Positions 10,680-34,839 of a stretch of DNA of 64,000 nt are shown here, in pieces. Both the position numbers and the translations under genes were made by a program. Below the pieces are notes generated by a model. That model saw nothing but the letters and a program-made list of their open reading frames with translations, ran no database searches and had not been told where the DNA came from. The first letter of the stretch is position 1; every line of letters begins with the position of its first letter. The DNA is from Setoptus koraiensis (Eukaryota; Animalia; Arthropoda): the NCBI GenBank assembly GCA_048013815.1, contig CM106585.1, positions 8,680,001 to 8,744,000 on the forward strand, written 5' to 3'.

Positions 10680-11951
10680 TCAATTCCAAGACAAGTGCTT
10701 GCGTCGTCTTTTGATGGGTAGTTTTTCGGGTAAATAATTATCCATTTCTTGGAATCTCCGAGGTCTTTTCTCAAATATTATGTTATCCAGATCGACATCG
10801 GCAAAGTTGGATGCACCTGGCACCCTGTCAGTTTGATCCACCAAAGGGGATCCTTGCTCAGGCGTGAGGAATATATCTTTGAATGGAACATGCCGCCTCA
10901 CTGAATTCCCACCGTGGTTGTACTCTACGTCGAACATCAAACTTCCTTGATTCTGAGAATGTTGGCCATAAACTATAGCGTTGACGCATAAATTTTTAGA
11001 TATGGCAACACGTACGTTCTTTTTGTTAACATTCATCACTGGAATCAAATCAATAACAGTTGATGCCTTCGTGCCGCCGTCACAAAAATTGACTATGTAT
11101 TTTTTATCTCCAGTGGGTTTCTGAACAGTGCCAGGGTAAAAGTGTAAATCAGTCCATTTAGCGAACACCTTTGCGTTATTCGTCCGAGTAATTTGACTTT
11201 CCAGTAATAAAGAATCAGAAGAAACTGTGCTCAATCTTTCGGGAGGAGCAAGAGTCAAACAAGACTTTTCTTCTATGCTTCCAATACTAGACGGACCCGT
11301 ATCAGATATCTCTTGTATTGCCATGGTGTTTTCATCCAACATATCAGGTAACTTTTTAGCACCAAGGGAATCATTGGGTGGCGACTGGGGTTGTTGGTCT
11401 GTCAGAGATGGTGAAGTCTCTCCCATCATATCAGGTGACTTTCTAGCATCAAGGGAATCACTGGGTGGCGATTGGGGCTGTTGGTCTGTTAAAGGTGGTG
11501 GAGTCTCTCCCATCATATCAGGTGACTTTATAGCATCAAGGGAATCATTGGGTGGCGATTGGGGTTGTTGGTCTGTTAAAGGTGGTAAAGTCTCTTCCTT
11601 CTGACTAGAGAGATCAGGACATGGAACCGATTCAGTAGGCATTAAATCGTCTTGTGCTACTACAGTACTTTTGATAACTTCAATAGTAGGAATAGTTGAA
11701 CTGTTAGTGGTCTCCGCGATCTTTTCATGTTTGAGGGTAGTGGAAGATTTTTCATAGCCGGCCAGCTGAGTTTCGCTCAAGGCTATCTTACTGACTATAC
11801 GGCTAATTTCCTCGCTTTCAAGGGGTGTCCGGTCCAAAATTTTACCTCTAAAAAAAATTTGCTCTTCTACTATGAATTTTACAACTAGACGAACTTCGGC
11901 TTGCTCGCAACTCGAATCATTTTCGGTTTCTGAAACTTCTGTAATTACCAT
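10680..11951 (-). CDS. TP53BP1: 53BP1-like protein: oligomerisation domain, tandem Tudor, UDR and NLS, with no BRCT; a 5' exon is possible
   Basis: VRLVVKFIVEEQIFFRGKILDR (resembles the oligomerisation domain), VFAKWTDLHFYPGTV...KYIVNFCDG (Tudor) and ADVDLDNIIFEKRPRR (compare human UDR ADISLDNLVEGKRKRR). Confidence 0.8.
   Translation of the reverse strand: MVITEVSETENDSSCEQAEVRLVVKFIVEEQIFFRGKILDRTPLESEEISRIVSKIALSETQLAGYEKSSTTLKHEKIAETTNSSTIPTIEVIKSTVVAQDDLMPTESVPCPDLSSQKEETLPPLTDQQPQSPPNDSLDAIKSPDMMGETPPPLTDQQPQSPPSDSLDARKSPDMMGETSPSLTDQQPQSPPNDSLGAKKLPDMLDENTMAIQEISDTGPSSIGSIEEKSCLTLAPPERLSTVSSDSLLLESQITRTNNAKVFAKWTDLHFYPGTVQKPTGDKKYIVNFCDGGTKASTVIDLIPVMNVNKKNVRVAISKNLCVNAIVYGQHSQNQGSLMFDVEYNHGGNSVRRHVPFKDIFLTPEQGSPLVDQTDRVPGASNFADVDLDNIIFEKRPRRFQEMDNYLPEKLPIKRRRKHLSWN
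11341..11598. repeat. Three tandem 87-bp coding repeats (29 aa, PPLTDQQPQSPPxDSLxAxKSPDMMGET) in the 53BP1-like gene
   Basis: Units start at 11341, 11428 and 11515 (atatcagg...). Confidence 0.95.
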
Positions 11952-12759
11952 TGCTGCTGCATTGAAGCAATAAGTATATCTACAAATATATATATTTTTT
12001 TCTGTGTCTTAGTTATTATTGCTCAAATGGAGCACAGTCGATGAGTGGTCTGGAAAATGTATCCCTAATAAGTGTTTGTGCGCAAATGATTTCTTTTAAA
12101 TGGTAGTTGTACCTTGGAGACGAAAGATGTTGCTTTTATATGTTGCTGATACTTGATGTCATTGATTACATTGCCAACAAATTGAGTCATTCGATGGAGG
12201 ATAAGAAGAATGTTAGTCTCAAATAAGTGATATTTACTATCAAGTAGCAACATAGTAGTTCGCGTAGTATTTGCTGTATTTATATTTTAAATATTATTTA
12301 CCAAAAATAATTGTAGCGAACCGGCTAGTCAATATTTATCTCTAGCTTGAAAATGTAATATGGTGGTAACTTGTTAGCTGCTGCAATCTACTGCTATCAT
12401 TGGTCTATTGGTGGGTGTAAGATAGAGGTATACAGTAATGCGAAACGCATAAACACATCCTAACAATTACACTATGATAATAGTATTGATATTGATAATA
12501 ATAGCAGTAATAATAGTGGTAATAGTAGTCGTTGCAGTAATAGTGGTGATGGTGTCGATGGTGGTGGTGGCGGTGGTGATGATAATATATAAACAACAAT
12601 ATCAATAGCAGCAATTTAATATAAATGATTAAAGTAATGTCTCCTCTTGTGGCATGCCGTGTGTAATTGACGATTAATGCATTAAATCTGAGTTGCTCCT
12701 TTTTAGATTGGCGTCCCACTCTGTAGTAATGCTAGTTATTAATATGTGTGAGTGAATGT

Positions 12760-28397: not shown

Positions 28398-31642
<3,245 letters not shown>

Positions 31643-31917
31643 TTTTGTCTTTTAATCAATTTCTTGTTGAAAACCAATCATCAGTTAGACAAATAAACTC
31701 ACTAAGACTCAAATAATGACATGTGGTCCTCATTTAAAACCCGACACCGACAAGTTTGTGTCACAAGGAAGAAAAATCGATTCGGTCATAGGTGTAATGG
31801 TACTGAAAAGACCCAAATCAATGCGACAAGTGCACGGGACTGGGTGCTTGGCATCGATGGCCCCTCTAATTAGCCTAATTATAACACTATTTATTTATTC
31901 ATTATTATTTTAAACAT

Positions 31918-34839
31918 TTATACGGCGATTGGTTGAATGCCACCATGAATGTATTTGATACAAACAGTTGAATTGTGCGACTCGCCTTTTAAGTAACGGC
32001 ATAAAAACGCTTTTCGGCATTCACTATCACACTCGGCGTATTGCTTGGGCCCAAACACGTCACTATAACTATTGTATAATCTGTACAGTTTGTAGAGATC
32101 GTCATCATTTCCGGGCTCTTTTTTCAAGTTTTGCCGTTGTTCCTCCTCTTCTGACACGCGGCTCATGAGACTTTTCAATGAATCTGAGACTCGCTCTTTA
32201 AAGAACATCTTCTTAGCCATGCTAGTGATCAATTTGTGCATACTCTCGGGCGTCGTATCGGGTATGTTGAATGTTTGCGCGAAGGATCCCGCGTGCACCC
32301 ATTGCAATCCGGTTAGATCCGTCAGATCGGAATTATCGTGCAGACTGCTCTTCTGTAGACTGTCGCCGTGGTGATGGTGGTGATGGTGACCGTGGCTGTG
32401 GTGACCACTGTGGTGATGGTCGCCGTGGTGGTGATCGCCGTGGTGATGTTCGCTGTGGTTGTGATGGTCACTATGGTGGTGGTGGTGGTGGTGGTGGTCG
32501 CTGTGATTGTGCTCGCCGTGGTGGTGGTGGTGATGGTGGTCGCTGTGATTGTGCTCGCCGTGGTGGTGGTGGTGATGGTGGTCGCTGTGATTGTGCTCGC
32601 CGTGGTGGTGGTGATGGTGGTGGTGGTGGTGATCACCGCGATCGAGATACTGATCGGCGAGGCGCTGTTCGGCGAGGCGCTGATCGACGAGGCGCAGATC
32701 GCTGTAGTTTAGGTGATCGGCGTGGTGGTGATGGTGATGGTGGCCGTCTCCGTGATCGTGATGATGCTCGCCGTGGTGGTGGTGGTGATGGTGGTGATCA
32801 CTGTGGTTGTGGTGGTCGCTGTGGTTGTGGTGGTCGCTGTGGTTGTGGTGGTGACCACTGTGGTGGTGGTCGCCGTGGTGGTGGTGGTGATGGTGATGGT
32901 GCTGGTCACTGTGCGGGCTGGTACTGTTGTCGTTCCTCTTGACACGCGGCGTTGAGGGCGCCGGAAGCTCGTTTGCCGCCGTCAGGTTCAAATAGTAGGT
33001 GTCGAAGTCTACGGGCATGAACGACAGCGTCGGATCTATCGTGTAAATGCGATAGCTGGGATTCAACCCGATAAATGTTGTCGACGACGGTCCGATGAAG
33101 CCGATGGAGATGGGCTCCACGGTGGCCAGCGAGGCCACCTCTAGCAGCTCTTCGTTAGTGGGCTCGCTGTGGGCCACTAGCGGCGCGTCGATGTAATTGG
33201 ACATGTCCTGTTGGGGCGCCATCACCAATTGGCTGACATTTGTCAGGGTTTGCTTGTCGTAAAATATCTCGAATTCGTTGTAGTGAGTGTGGCCGTAAAA
33301 TTGTGCTGTCACCGTGCTCTTGTATCGCCTTATGATGCGATTGAAATTTTTCGACCAAACCTTCATACAGTCGTCTGCTCCGGGCGGAATGTGACCAATG
33401 ATGTGCACCTTCTCTTTTAGCAATTCCGATATCTGTAACTCGTACACTAGCCACTGCAACTGATTGCCCGGATCAGTGGAATTGATGAACAGCCAGAAAT
33501 TTTTGTCGTGACAATAGTTTGTGTTCAGCGATATTATCTTCAAGCCTGGCCTGACAATGGCCGCATAATTGCCGTCCTTCAATATTGTCGACTCCGTTGA
33601 ACGAGGCAACCATTGGCGCCAAAATTTGTCAAATTGCCTGTACACCCATTTGGGCGACTCATCTTCATCGGCAATATTCCACAAGTTGCTAGGTGCGAAA
33701 CTGTCAACAGGTACCATTTCGTGATTGCCCAATGTGGGAAATATCTTCACGCCAGGCAGATGCTGGTGCACCAGATCGTAGACCGCGTCAAAGGTGCCCA
33801 AAGCGGTCGTGTTGCTCTGTTTCCAAACATCGTGCGGCTGTATGTCGCCAGTCCATATTATGTAATCAATGTCGTGATTCTTGCGCAGCGTGGCATTCAG
33901 GTTCATGAGGAGCTGCTCGAACGTTCTCACGGGTATATCACACTTTGAATAGGAGCCCCAGTAGCCCGCTTTGCCGTCTTTGTCGGCCGTTCTGTAGTCG
34001 ACGTTTCTGAATGTCGGTCCCGAATTGTCTAGTACCTGGTCGAGCCTGTTGAGAGTGTTGCTGGCCCGCGTAGAGCTAGCCTGGCAACATAGGGGCTCCT
34101 CGCAGTCGCTTATGGATCCCTCGAGATAGTTTAGATCGACATGAGTGTCGGATATGTGAATAACTTTGTATTTTGAGGCTTGCGACTTGCTATTGGCATC
34201 CAATTGATGCAGTTTCTCGTCGATGCCATACTCGTGCAGAATTTCCATGTCCAGATGCTCGCTTGCCTCCAGCGACACCGACCAATCGGCAAACGGGTCG
34301 TACATTTTTCCGCAGTGATTGTCCGACAACAAGCCACATATTTGATCTGGCGTAAACAGTGCGTACGCGAGCACCTTGCTCACTTCACCCGAAAACAGTT
34401 TTGCTATCGAGGAGCAAACGAGCTCAGATTCGTATTTGGCATTGGTGCATATGGTCCTGGCTATCTCCTCTATTTTTGTCCGTCCCCTGGTGGTCTGAAG
34501 GGCGTACTGAACTATGCTGGCCGAGAAGCGACACAACAGACAGTCTTTGGTGGAGAATTTTCTGTTGAAATTCAAATTCCTCAAAAATGACTCCTTCAGG
34601 CTGTCGAAGGCCACGTTGGTCGCGTTCACGCCAATCAAATTGGTCAGCATTCCTCTGGCCGTGTTCGAGCCGTTTCCGGTTGCGGCTTGCTGCTGCTCGC
34701 CATACTTGGCGATCTTTGTTCTGAAGGTGGTTGTTGCGAATACGTCGTTCGGGTCGCCGGTATCTTGTGACAGCGCCACTTGTATTACTAATAGGACTGA
34801 CAAAGTGCTGAATATAAGACAATTACGAATAGTAGCCAT
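31918..34839 (-). CDS. SMPD1: Acid sphingomyelinase (saposin-B plus metallophosphoesterase) with a His-rich insertion, intronless ORF
   Basis: Signal peptide; saposin Cys pattern (CLLC...IC...VC...QICG...C); HISDTHVD, WTGDIQPHD, LGNHE, IGHIPPG, FYGHTH; YNPSYRIY-like LNPSYRIY; C-terminal C...C...LC. Confidence 0.92.
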   Translation of the reverse strand: MATIRNCLIFSTLSVLLVIQVALSQDTGDPNDVFATTTFRTKIAKYGEQQQAATGNGSNTARGMLTNLIGVNATNVAFDSLKESFLRNLNFNRKFSTKDCLLCRFSASIVQYALQTTRGRTKIEEIARTICTNAKYESELVCSSIAKLFSGEVSKVLAYALFTPDQICGLLSDNHCGKMYDPFADWSVSLEASEHLDMEILHEYGIDEKLHQLDANSKSQASKYKVIHISDTHVDLNYLEGSISDCEEPLCCQASSTRASNTLNRLDQVLDNSGPTFRNVDYRTADKDGKAGYWGSYSKCDIPVRTFEQLLMNLNATLRKNHDIDYIIWTGDIQPHDVWKQSNTTALGTFDAVYDLVHQHLPGVKIFPTLGNHEMVPVDSFAPSNLWNIADEDESPKWVYRQFDKFWRQWLPRSTESTILKDGNYAAIVRPGLKIISLNTNYCHDKNFWLFINSTDPGNQLQWLVYELQISELLKEKVHIIGHIPPGADDCMKVWSKNFNRIIRRYKSTVTAQFYGHTHYNEFEIFYDKQTLTNVSQLVMAPQQDMSNYIDAPLVAHSEPTNEELLEVASLATVEPISIGFIGPSSTTFIGLNPSYRIYTIDPTLSFMPVDFDTYYLNLTAANELPAPSTPRVKRNDNSTSPHSDQHHHHHHHHHGDHHHSGHHHNHSDHHNHSDHHNHSDHHHHHHHHGEHHHDHGDGHHHHHHHADHLNYSDLRLVDQRLAEQRLADQYLDRGDHHHHHHHHHHGEHNHSDHHHHHHHGEHNHSDHHHHHHHGEHNHSDHHHHHHHHSDHHNHSEHHHGDHHHGDHHHSGHHSHGHHHHHHHGDSLQKSSLHDNSDLTDLTGLQWVHAGSFAQTFNIPDTTPESMHKLITSMAKKMFFKERVSDSLKSLMSRVSEEEEQRQNLKKEPGNDDDLYKLYRLYNSYSDVFGPKQYAECDSECRKAFLCRYLKGESHNSTVCIKYIHGGIQPIAV
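32368..32913 (-). repeat. In-frame His-rich repeat (about 182 codons, about 100 His) built from DHHHG and GEHNHSDH7 units
   Basis: CAC/CAT-rich tandem units counted in the translated ORF. Confidence 0.95.

What the first reader, a model, noticed from the sequence alone, without database searches (positions are those of the whole stretch)
32345..32950. Sphingomyelinase with a furin-gated, ~100-His, N-glycan-studded insert: a possible built-in metal sponge
Seen: an in-frame insert of about 200 aa between YYLNLTAAN and LQW in the C-terminal domain of an otherwise intact acid sphingomyelinase. It opens with R-V-K-R (32935-32946), has about 100 His in 182 residues, and carries 7 N-H-S plus N-Y-S and N-S-T sequons. 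Its middle (DQRLA EQRLA DQYLD) is the same 15-bp DHHHG unit mutated toward a His-free sequence. Established: ASM is a secreted or lysosomal Zn2+-dependent enzyme, RxKR is a furin site, and poly-His binds Zn/Ni/Cu in a pH-dependent way. Inference: a cis-acting metal reservoir or pH switch, or a cleaved metal-chelating glycopeptide. If the host is a plant-feeding mite, it could be a salivary effector combining sphingolipid hydrolysis with metal sequestration.
Basis: partly seen in the sequence, partly recalled or inferred. Interest (0 to 1): 0.75.

Follow-up and report, generated by a model that had tools for sequence, protein, structure and literature searches.

The report
Mite acid sphingomyelinase with poly-histidine loop
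An otherwise normal, well-conserved lysosomal/secreted lipid-cleaving enzyme (acid sphingomyelinase) of a tiny plant-feeding mite carries a species-specific, repeat-born floppy loop of about 220 residues containing 104 histidines; the loop should bind metals and switch charge with pH, but nothing yet shows that this serves a purpose.

Summary
Window 31918-34839 (-) is one uninterrupted 973-aa ORF. It encodes a complete acid sphingomyelinase (ASM): signal peptide, saposin domain, di-zinc metallophosphatase domain with all metal ligands, and C-terminal domain. Between the conserved N-L-T sequon and the C-terminal domain lie 221 extra residues with 104 His, an RVKR motif, 7 NHS sequons, one NYS and one NST.

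The insert is built from 15-, 18- and 42-bp tandem units of His codons, some 97% identical. AlphaFold2 models it as disordered. It is absent from the syntenic orthologue (76% identity, 38-aa loop) and from 120 other homologues (the 32 loops measured are 6-38 aa).

The enzyme itself is under strong purifying selection. I found no splice signals in the insert, and assembled contigs from four runs in four studies read into the repeat from both sides. No RNA data were available.

Best reading: a lineage-specific repeat expansion in a tolerant surface loop. It would have intrinsic metal-binding capacity and a large pH-dependent charge switch (about -6 at pH 7, about +79 at pH 5). An adaptive "zinc sponge" role is possible but unsupported. 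A released glycopeptide is unlikely because there is only one dibasic site, and the salivary-effector idea has no support. Unchecked notes from this scan report other His-rich proteins in this genome.

The parts
31918..34839 (-). Complete single-exon gene for a 973-aa acid sphingomyelinase (stop codon 31918-31920)
   Evidence: The ORF is uninterrupted. phmmer against PDB finds human and mouse ASM at E 1e-97. Pfam Metallophos, E 3e-12. There are 531 homologues. pN 0.14 against pS 0.75 versus the orthologue.
34768..34839 (-). Predicted signal peptide (aa 1-24)
   Evidence: Hydrophobic N-terminus MATIRNCLIFSTLSVLLVIQVALS, read directly. Modelled as helix 2-23. Conserved in P0001. No signal-peptide predictor was run.
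34267..34554 (-). Saposin-like domain (aa 96-191) with six conserved Cys
   Evidence: Aligns to residues 42-133 of 5i81. C100, C103, C131, C142, C168 and C176 are invariant or nearly invariant across 50 sequences.
32980..34170 (-). Catalytic di-zinc metallophosphatase domain (aa 224-620). It includes a mite-specific variable loop at aa 534-574 and ends with the conserved N-L-T sequon (aa 618-620, window 32980-32988).
   Evidence: Invariant D231, H233, D332, N372, H373, H483, H517 and H519 correspond to human D206, H208, D278, N318, H319, H425, H457 and H459, as listed in PMC5062611. pLDDT is above 90.
32308..32970 (-). The whole insert (aa 624-844, 221 aa, 104 His), placed in the loop that is 6-12 aa long in most homologues
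   Evidence: pLDDT is below 50 for aa 633-836. GC is 0.60-0.61 against 0.34-0.40 in flanking non-coding DNA.
32935..32946 (-). R-V-K-R (aa 632-635), the only RX[KR]R motif in the protein and a candidate proprotein-convertase site
   Evidence: V-K-R is kept in orthologue P0001, but P4 is Met there. About 10% of shuffles of the rest of the protein contain such a motif somewhere. Cleavage was not tested.
32701..32907 (-). 5' His arm (aa 645-713): 18- and 36-bp units encoding DHHNHS and H8-type runs
32635..32700 (-). His-free middle block DLRLV-DQRLA-EQRLA-DQYLD-RG (aa 714-735), a 15-bp unit in 3.5 copies, probably a mutated and re-duplicated HHHAD unit
   Evidence: TRF reports 32650-32701 at 89% matches. 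The match to the adjacent His unit is 12/15 nt, and the Q, R and L codons are each one step from CAC. A few short low-confidence helical turns fall in or just before it in the model.
32362..32634 (-). 3' His arm (aa 736-826): a 42-bp unit GEHNHSDHHHHHHH in 3.5 copies at 97% identity (32476-32624), followed by 15-bp GDHHH units
31921..32307 (-). C-terminal helical domain of ASM (aa 845-973), intact
   Evidence: Aligned with eriophyoid and spider-mite ASMs, with conserved Cys and the SD motif. pLDDT is mostly 81-98, with one dip to 66 and a low-confidence tail. pN is 0.096 versus the orthologue.

Best explanation
The gene is the functional acid sphingomyelinase orthologue of an eriophyoid mite, a secretory-pathway enzyme that may be lysosomal, secreted or both. 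In this lineage, short in-frame units made almost wholly of His codons (CAC/CAT) and their one- or two-step derivatives (Asp, Asn, Ser, Gly, Glu) expanded inside a surface loop. The likely process is replication slippage or unequal exchange. The loop joins the catalytic domain to the C-terminal domain, directly after the conserved glycosylated N-L-T site.

That loop tolerates length change in the family (6-38 aa in relatives). Here the expansion produced a roughly 220-residue disordered tether.

Shown: the tract exists; it is in frame; it is repeat-built and partly very young; it is lineage-specific; the enzyme around it is constrained.

Inferred: it is translated. If so, it will chelate Zn, Ni or Cu, and it will switch from about -6 net charge at pH 7 to about +79 at pH 5. 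Its effect on the enzyme is most likely near-neutral or mildly modulatory, not a dedicated evolved module.
For: - ASM identity and intact active site.
- Tandem architecture, with 97%-identical 42-bp copies.
- In the His arms, 128 of 160 codons are His or one base change from a His codon. The middle block is derivable from the HHHAD unit.
- The syntenic orthologue L001/P0001 lacks the tract: 76% identity, Pkinase_C neighbour conserved, synonymous sites saturated. It carries an unrelated 38-aa loop instead.
- None of 120 homologues is His-rich. In the 32 loops that could be measured, length varies from 6 to 38 aa (examples).
- Other eriophyoid ASMs carry Ser/Thr/Glu-rich low-complexity inserts in two other loops.
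- The insert is modelled as disordered while the domains stay confident.
- pN is far below pS, and 6 of 7 differences between samples are synonymous.
- No donor-like splice site or T-rich acceptor occurs in the insert, and its GC is 0.60.
- 83.7% of genes are intronless in the sequenced eriophyoid Aculops lycopersici, and its remaining introns are 5'-biased: PMC7738191.
- Contigs from four runs in four studies enter the repeat from both flanks, with no joint that skips it.
- Unchecked scan notes list further His-rich low-complexity proteins in this genome, some intracellular.
Against: - Composition: the non-His residues in the arms are almost only Asp, Gly, Ser, Asn and Glu. The equally reachable Pro, Arg and Leu codons (CCC, CGC, CTC) are absent from the arms, and Tyr and Gln occur once each. 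This hints at compositional filtering, as in genuine metal-binding or soluble disordered regions. Unit duplication makes these counts non-independent.
- Extremity: at 56% His over 182 residues, the tract is extreme for an enzyme, and it sits in a zinc enzyme whose secreted form is zinc-limited.
- No expression data: there is no RNA or protein evidence, so translation of the tract is inferred.
- Distant comparison: the only close orthologue is separated by saturated synonymous divergence, so the age and distribution of the tract within the genus are unknown.
- Possible sampling bias: short-read assemblies break inside the repeat. Orthologues that carry such a tract could therefore be under-represented among full-length database proteins. 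A search for C-terminal fragments was blank and uninformative.
Confidence: 0.6

Rival explanations
1. Adaptive cis-acting metal reservoir or pH switch. The poly-His/Asp loop captures Zn2+ in the secretory pathway or extracellularly. It then hands the zinc to, or buffers it for, the di-zinc site of an ASM form that would otherwise need exogenous zinc. Alternatively it gates activity through protonation.
For: - ASM requires two Zn ions, and the secreted form needs exogenous zinc (PMC5062611).
- There are 104 His together with 31 Asp/Glu, and no Pro, Arg or Leu codons in the arms.
- The calculated charge switch is large.
- A tether this long could reach the active site.
- From memory: bacterial Cu,Zn-superoxide dismutases with His-rich N-terminal extensions, and the His-rich loops of ZIP/ZnT transporters, are precedents for cis metal capture.
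Against: - The tract is not conserved. It is absent from the syntenic orthologue and from 120 homologues.
- The repeat copies are very young.
- The anchor point is next to the N520-equivalent glycan. PMC5062611 describes all glycans as far from the active-site cleft.
- A high-capacity chelator could just as well compete with the active site for zinc.
- His-rich low-complexity segments seem common in this genome, including in non-metalloproteins (unchecked notes).
Confidence: 0.2
2. pH-gated membrane tether. At lysosomal or otherwise acidic pH the tract becomes a polycation of about +80. It would clamp the enzyme to anionic membranes and release it at neutral pH.
For: - Calculated charge is -6 at pH 7 and +79 at pH 5.
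- The tract is a disordered, exposed loop.
- From memory: mammalian ASM is held on anionic inner lysosomal membranes electrostatically, and cationic amphiphilic drugs displace it.
Against: The lack of conservation applies here as well. No membrane or localisation data exist. The pKa values inside a dense His run will be depressed, so the real switch is smaller and shifted to lower pH.
Confidence: 0.1
3. The tract is not part of the mature protein. Either it is removed from the mRNA as an in-frame intron or exitron, or its length is an assembly artefact.
For: - All three frames of a CAC repeat are open, so an ORF across it proves little.
- No run on record as RNA was available.
- Short-read contigs break inside the repeat, so its assembled length is not independently confirmed.
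Against: - No GT site in aa 600-860 matches at least 7 of 9 positions of MAG|GTRAGT, and no acceptor has a T-rich tract.
- GC is 0.60, unlike the AT-rich non-coding DNA here.
- Eriophyoid genes are mostly intronless.
- Contigs from four runs in four studies read 55-234 nt into the repeat from both flanks, and none joins across it.
- Both flanks of the loop are coding in the orthologue.
Confidence: 0.07
4. Salivary effector. The enzyme is injected into plant cells, and furin-type cleavage releases a metal-chelating glycopeptide.
For: The protein has a signal peptide. An RVKR motif sits at the start of the tract. The host is a plant-feeding mite.
Against: - There is only one RX[KR]R site, so nothing is released. 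The tract would remain fused to the C-terminal domain.
- The gene is the conserved, syntenic, strongly constrained orthologue of the general arthropod ASM, not a lineage-specific secreted family.
- The Aculops lycopersici genome paper never mentions sphingomyelinase, in its secretome section or elsewhere.
- From memory: plants contain no sphingomyelin.
Confidence: 0.03

Closest known systems
Mammalian acid sphingomyelinase SMPD1 (PDB 5i81, 5jg8, 5fi9)
   Same: The architecture is the same: signal peptide, saposin domain, di-zinc metallophosphatase domain and helical C-terminal domain. All metal ligands and the N-L-T sequon equivalent to human N520 are conserved.
   Different: The human loop after N-L-T is short, going by the other homologues (6-12 aa in most) and by the human sequence as I recall it. 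Here it is about 230 aa with 104 His. There are two further mite-specific variable loops, at aa 534-574 and in the C-terminal domain.
Eriophyoid mite ASM orthologues (Aceria tosichella A0A6G1S708 = P0003; unnamed P0001 on locus L001)
   Same: Identity is 50-76%. Synteny with the Pkinase_C-containing neighbour is kept at L001. The same three loops are length-variable and of low complexity.
   Different: Their low-complexity inserts are rich in Ser, Thr, Glu and Asp, or mixed. None is His-rich. P0001 has a 38-aa non-repetitive loop at the same site and shares only V-K-R.
His-rich metal-binding segments: histidine-rich glycoprotein, Helicobacter Hpn, Plasmodium HRP2, ZIP/ZnT transporter loops, and the His-rich N-terminal extension of some bacterial Cu,Zn-superoxide dismutases (recalled from memory, not tested here)
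   Same: The composition is similar: His with Asp, Glu, Gly and Ser in short tandem units. The segment is disordered and is expected to bind Zn, Ni or Cu in a pH-dependent way. The SOD and transporter cases are cis-acting metal-capture elements attached to a metalloprotein.
   Different: There is no sequence homology, because similarity is compositional only. Those segments are conserved within their families and their metal binding has been measured. This tract is unconserved and untested, and it is far longer than the transporter or SOD segments.
Poly-His and other single-amino-acid repeats generated by replication slippage (for example the human His-repeat proteins of PMC2644819)
   Same: It is a codon-repeat array with near-identical DNA copies, lineage-specific and located in a disordered region (paper listed).
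   Different: The human His tracts are short. [quoted passage not shown] This tract has 104 His and sits in a secretory-pathway enzyme.

Membership tests
Acid sphingomyelinase (SMPD1-type ASM) | Metallophosphatase catalytic domain with the seven di-zinc ligands plus the catalytic His | tested here: met
   D231, H233, D332, N372, H373, H483, H517 and H519 are invariant in a 50-sequence alignment. They lie in the DxH, GD, GNHE, GH and GHTH motifs aligned to 5i81. The human ligands are listed in PMC5062611.
Acid sphingomyelinase (SMPD1-type ASM) | N-terminal saposin domain with six Cys | tested here: met
   aa 99-191 align to 5i81 residues 42-133. C100, C103, C131, C142, C168 and C176 are conserved. 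The model is helical there with pLDDT 80-91.
Acid sphingomyelinase (SMPD1-type ASM) | Helical C-terminal domain after the conserved N-L-T sequon | tested here: met
   aa 845-973 align with relatives that carry Pfam PF19272. pLDDT is mostly 81-98. PF19272 itself did not score on the isolated 134-aa piece, probably because the insert splits the model.
Acid sphingomyelinase (SMPD1-type ASM) | Zinc-dependent phosphodiesterase activity on sphingomyelin or a related lipid at acid pH | not testable with these tools
   This needs an enzyme assay. The natural substrate in mites is unknown. From memory, many arthropods use ceramide phosphoethanolamine in place of sphingomyelin.
Functional His-rich metal-binding module | High His density with measured metal binding | not testable with these tools
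   The density criterion is met (102 of 182). Binding is a chemical inference only.
Functional His-rich metal-binding module | Conservation of the His-rich segment among orthologues | tested here: not met
   The segment is absent from P0001 and from 119 other homologues, none of which exceeds 5 His per 30 aa.
Proprotein-convertase (furin-type) substrate | R-X-K/R-R motif in an exposed region of a secretory-pathway protein | tested here: met
   RVKR lies at aa 632-635, at the start of the disordered segment. A signal peptide is present by inspection.
Proprotein-convertase (furin-type) substrate | Actual cleavage, and a second site that would release the peptide | tested here: not met
   There is no second RX[KR]R anywhere in the protein. 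The P4 Arg is not conserved in P0001, which reads M-V-K-R. Cleavage itself cannot be tested here.
Spliceosomal intron or exitron | Consensus GT donor, and a YAG acceptor preceded by a pyrimidine/T-rich tract | tested here: not met
   No donor reaches 7 of 9 matches to MAG|GTRAGT. Acceptor candidates have at most 29% T upstream, and those inside the tract have 0-14%. GC is 0.60. No contig joint skips the insert. RNA evidence is lacking.

The most novel reading that the evidence does not exclude
The poly-His/Asp loop is a selected, built-in zinc buffer and acid-triggered polycation. It would make this mite's ASM self-sufficient for zinc, or pH-gated for membrane binding. That would be a natural example of a giant 'His-tag' recruited as a cis regulatory module of a metalloenzyme. 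It might also be part of a genome-wide use of His-rich secreted proteins in eriophyoid mites.
Probability: 0.2. Interest if true: 0.65.

Novelty: new variant of a known kind. Interest (0 to 1): 0.4.

Why it matters
If the tract is translated, this is one of the most His-dense natural segments I know of in an enzyme: 56% His over 182 residues, inserted into a zinc enzyme of the secretory pathway. It offers a natural experiment in three respects. The first is how much disordered, metal-chelating, pH-titratable sequence a lysosomal or secreted hydrolase can carry. The second is whether such tracts are drift products in the streamlined genomes of eriophyoid mites or are recruited for metal handling. 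The third is practical, since the native protein should be purifiable on immobilised-metal resin. If the tract is only a neutral expansion, the lesson is more modest: it documents how tolerant this ASM loop is, and how a His array can decay into a new non-His repeat (QRLAD).

Tried and rejected
- Pfam on the full protein returned nothing, probably because of compositional bias. The pieces had to be scanned separately.
- The ESM Atlas feature search with the insert gave no usable hit.
- I searched with a C-terminal fragment to find orthologues broken inside such a repeat. Only 2 candidates came up and neither was significant, so the result is uninformative.
- The sequencing-run search found no run on record as RNA. 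All runs are kept as contigs, and the reads tool skipped 32467-32913 as repeat. Neither mRNA retention nor the exact repeat length could therefore be checked.
- Run X7 has short, patchy, low-depth contigs confined to the gene. One starts 35 nt past the stop codon and extends 234 nt into the repeat. That would fit RNA, but the kind of run is unknown, so I did not use it as evidence.
- Literature searches found no report of ASM with a His-rich insert and no eriophyoid sphingomyelinase study.
- A second His-rich hit in the six-frame scan (12486-12635, minus strand) is a His/Tyr-type microsatellite inside a non-genic-looking 104-aa ORF. I rejected it as a gene.
- The ORFs on the + strand across the repeat (Gly/Arg- or Val-rich) are by-products of the repeat.
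- I did not use the large representative-protein search. The word search and the family scans left no doubt about the enzyme's identity.
Full report
**What is there**

Window 31918-34839 (minus strand) is one uninterrupted ORF of 973 codons.

- Its first 620 residues match human and mouse acid sphingomyelinase structures at E 1e-97. The saposin domain, the catalytic domain and the strand leading to the N-L-T sequon all align.
- Pfam finds the metallophosphatase domain once the biased insert is removed.
- In a 50-sequence alignment the di-zinc ligands and the catalytic His are invariant: D231, H233, D332, N372, H373, H483, H517, H519. So are the six saposin cysteines. The human equivalents are listed in PMC5062611.
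- An AlphaFold2 model built on that alignment gives pLDDT above 90 for the catalytic domain and mostly 81-98 for the C-terminal domain. Residues 633-836 are below 50, so they are modelled as disordered.

**The insert**

Between YYLNLTAAN (aa 615-623) and LQW (aa 845) lie 221 residues (window 32308-32970) with 104 His. The core, aa 645-826, has 102 His in 182 residues.

RVKR sits at aa 632-635 (32935-32946) and is the only RX[KR]R motif in the protein. Seven NHS sequons, one NYS and one NST are present.

At the DNA level the tract is a nest of tandem units:

- 15-bp units encoding GDHHH;
- 18- and 36-bp units encoding DHHNHS;
- a 42-bp unit encoding GEHNHSDHHHHHHH, in 3.5 copies at 97% identity (32476-32624);
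- a separate 15-bp array (32650-32701) encoding the His-free middle DLRLV-DQRLA-EQRLA-DQYLD.

The middle unit QRLAD matches the adjacent HHHAD unit at 12 of 15 nt. Its Q, R and L codons are each one step from CAC. Only 0.7% of random 15-mers from the gene match the arms that well.

The seven NHS sequons come from duplication of about three founder units, so they are not independent.

**Whose gene it is**

The closest named homologue is the ASM of the wheat curl mite Aceria tosichella (Eriophyoidea), at 50% identity. About 35 unnamed proteins at 47-54% follow, and spider mites and other arthropods come in at about 38%.

One unnamed protein, P0001, is 76% identical. Its contig L001 keeps the same neighbour, a gene with a protein-kinase C-terminal domain in convergent orientation. 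In the window the corresponding kinase gene lies at about 28858-31486 (+).

Against this orthologue the proportion of synonymous differences is saturated (pS 0.75) while pN is 0.14, falling to 0.10-0.11 in the saposin, catalytic and C-terminal domains. Six of seven differences seen between samples are synonymous, and the seventh is Ile to Leu in the signal peptide.

The enzyme is therefore a constrained, functional orthologue and not a decaying or freely evolving copy.

**Is the tract shared?**

No.

- P0001 has a 38-aa non-repetitive loop at the same site. It shares only V-K-R with the query, and its P4 position is Met, not Arg.
- Among the 120 best homologues none has more than 5 His in any 30-aa window.
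- The loop could be measured in 32 of them. It is 6-12 aa in 29, 17-18 aa in two, and 38 aa in P0001.
- Other eriophyoid ASMs owe their extra length to Ser/Thr/Glu/Asp-rich inserts in two other loops, after the FYD strand and inside the C-terminal domain.

The family thus tolerates low-complexity expansion in three surface loops, and this species filled one of them with His.

One caveat applies. Short-read assemblies break inside this repeat, so orthologues with similar tracts could be missing from full-length protein sets. A search aimed at C-terminal fragments returned nothing and settles nothing.

**Real DNA? Retained in mRNA?**

I laid contigs from four runs in four studies on the gene; one of the runs may be the source of the assembly. 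All read into the repeat from both flanks, by 55-234 nt, and none joins across it. The tool skipped 32467-32913 as repeat, so the assembled length is not independently confirmed.

No run is on record as RNA, so mRNA retention is untested. The indirect evidence argues against an intron:

- no GT in aa 600-860 matches at least 7 of 9 positions of the donor consensus;
- acceptor candidates lack T-rich tracts;
- GC is 0.60 against 0.34-0.40 in neighbouring non-coding DNA;
- in the sequenced eriophyoid Aculops lycopersici, 83.7% of genes are intronless and the remaining introns are 5'-biased (PMC7738191).

**How it most likely works**

The best-supported account is a lineage-specific expansion of His-codon units by slippage or unequal exchange. 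It happened in a tolerant, glycan-flanked surface loop of a functional ASM. The reading frame is policed simply because the essential C-terminal domain lies downstream.

If translated, the tract must behave as poly-His does. It will chelate Zn, Ni and Cu, and it will titrate. A simple model (His pKa 6.3) takes the insert from about -6 at pH 7 to about +79 at pH 5. Real pKa values in dense His runs will be lower.

Whether this matters to the mite is open. Two observations keep a functional reading alive:

- In the arms the non-His residues are almost only Asp, Gly, Ser, Asn and Glu. The equally reachable Pro, Arg and Leu codons are absent, and Tyr and Gln occur once each. Duplication makes these counts non-independent.
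- Secreted ASM is known to need exogenous zinc.

Against a functional reading:

- there is no conservation;
- the copies are very young;
- the anchor point is next to the N520-equivalent glycan, and the structure paper places all glycans far from the active-site cleft;
- earlier unchecked scan notes list many His-rich low-complexity proteins in this genome, including an intracellular one. That points to a genome-wide tendency and not to an ASM-specific device.

- 'Furin-gated': the motif is there and exposed. A single cut would split the enzyme between the catalytic and C-terminal domains and leave the tract on the latter. No second site exists to free a peptide.
- 'N-glycan-studded': the sequons are present, but their occupancy is untested.
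- 'Salivary effector': I found nothing to support it. The gene is the general, syntenic arthropod ASM orthologue. Sphingomyelinase is not mentioned anywhere in the Aculops lycopersici genome paper, including its secretome section. From my own knowledge, plants lack sphingomyelin.

**Verdict**

The feature is real and striking. It is a new variant of a known enzyme, produced by a known process. Its metal-binding and pH-switch capacity is inferred from chemistry, and an adaptive role remains unproven. I put that role at about 0.2-0.3, counting the zinc-reservoir and membrane-tether readings together.

Noticed in passing
window 33118-33240 (-), aa 534-574; and about 32100-32200 (-), aa 880-912: The ASM has two further eriophyoid-specific variable loops. 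In Aceria-like relatives (P0002, P0003, P0005) they are expanded into long Ser/Thr/Glu/Asp-rich low-complexity stretches, which account for those proteins' 811-831 aa length.
   Followed up: partly
window 28858-31486 (+): The downstream neighbour is an AGC/PKC-like kinase gene split by introns. It has a roughly 400-aa Ser/Thr/Lys-rich low-complexity N-terminal ORF that runs into the glycine-loop motif. Its convergent arrangement with the ASM gene is conserved on orthologous contig L001.
   Followed up: partly
window 12486-12635 (-): A His/Tyr-coding-like CAY/TAY microsatellite lies inside a 104-aa ORF that does not look genic. His-codon-type repeats therefore also occur outside genes here.
   Followed up: partly
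window 31883-32466 and onward (run X7): Run X7 (a different organism label, low depth) has short contigs only within the gene. One starts 35 nt past the stop codon and extends 234 nt into the His repeat. The pattern would fit a transcript in a host-plant or mixed RNA sample, but the kind of run is unknown.
   Followed up: no
window 11336-11595: An 87-bp tandem repeat, 3.0 copies at 90% identity. It falls inside the region that another first-stage note describes as a repeated ~90-bp promoter element.
   Followed up: no
window 34815-34816 and 33066-34480: Seven single-base differences between samples. Six are synonymous and one is I9L in the signal peptide. At least three haplotypes of this gene exist in public data.
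   Followed up: yes
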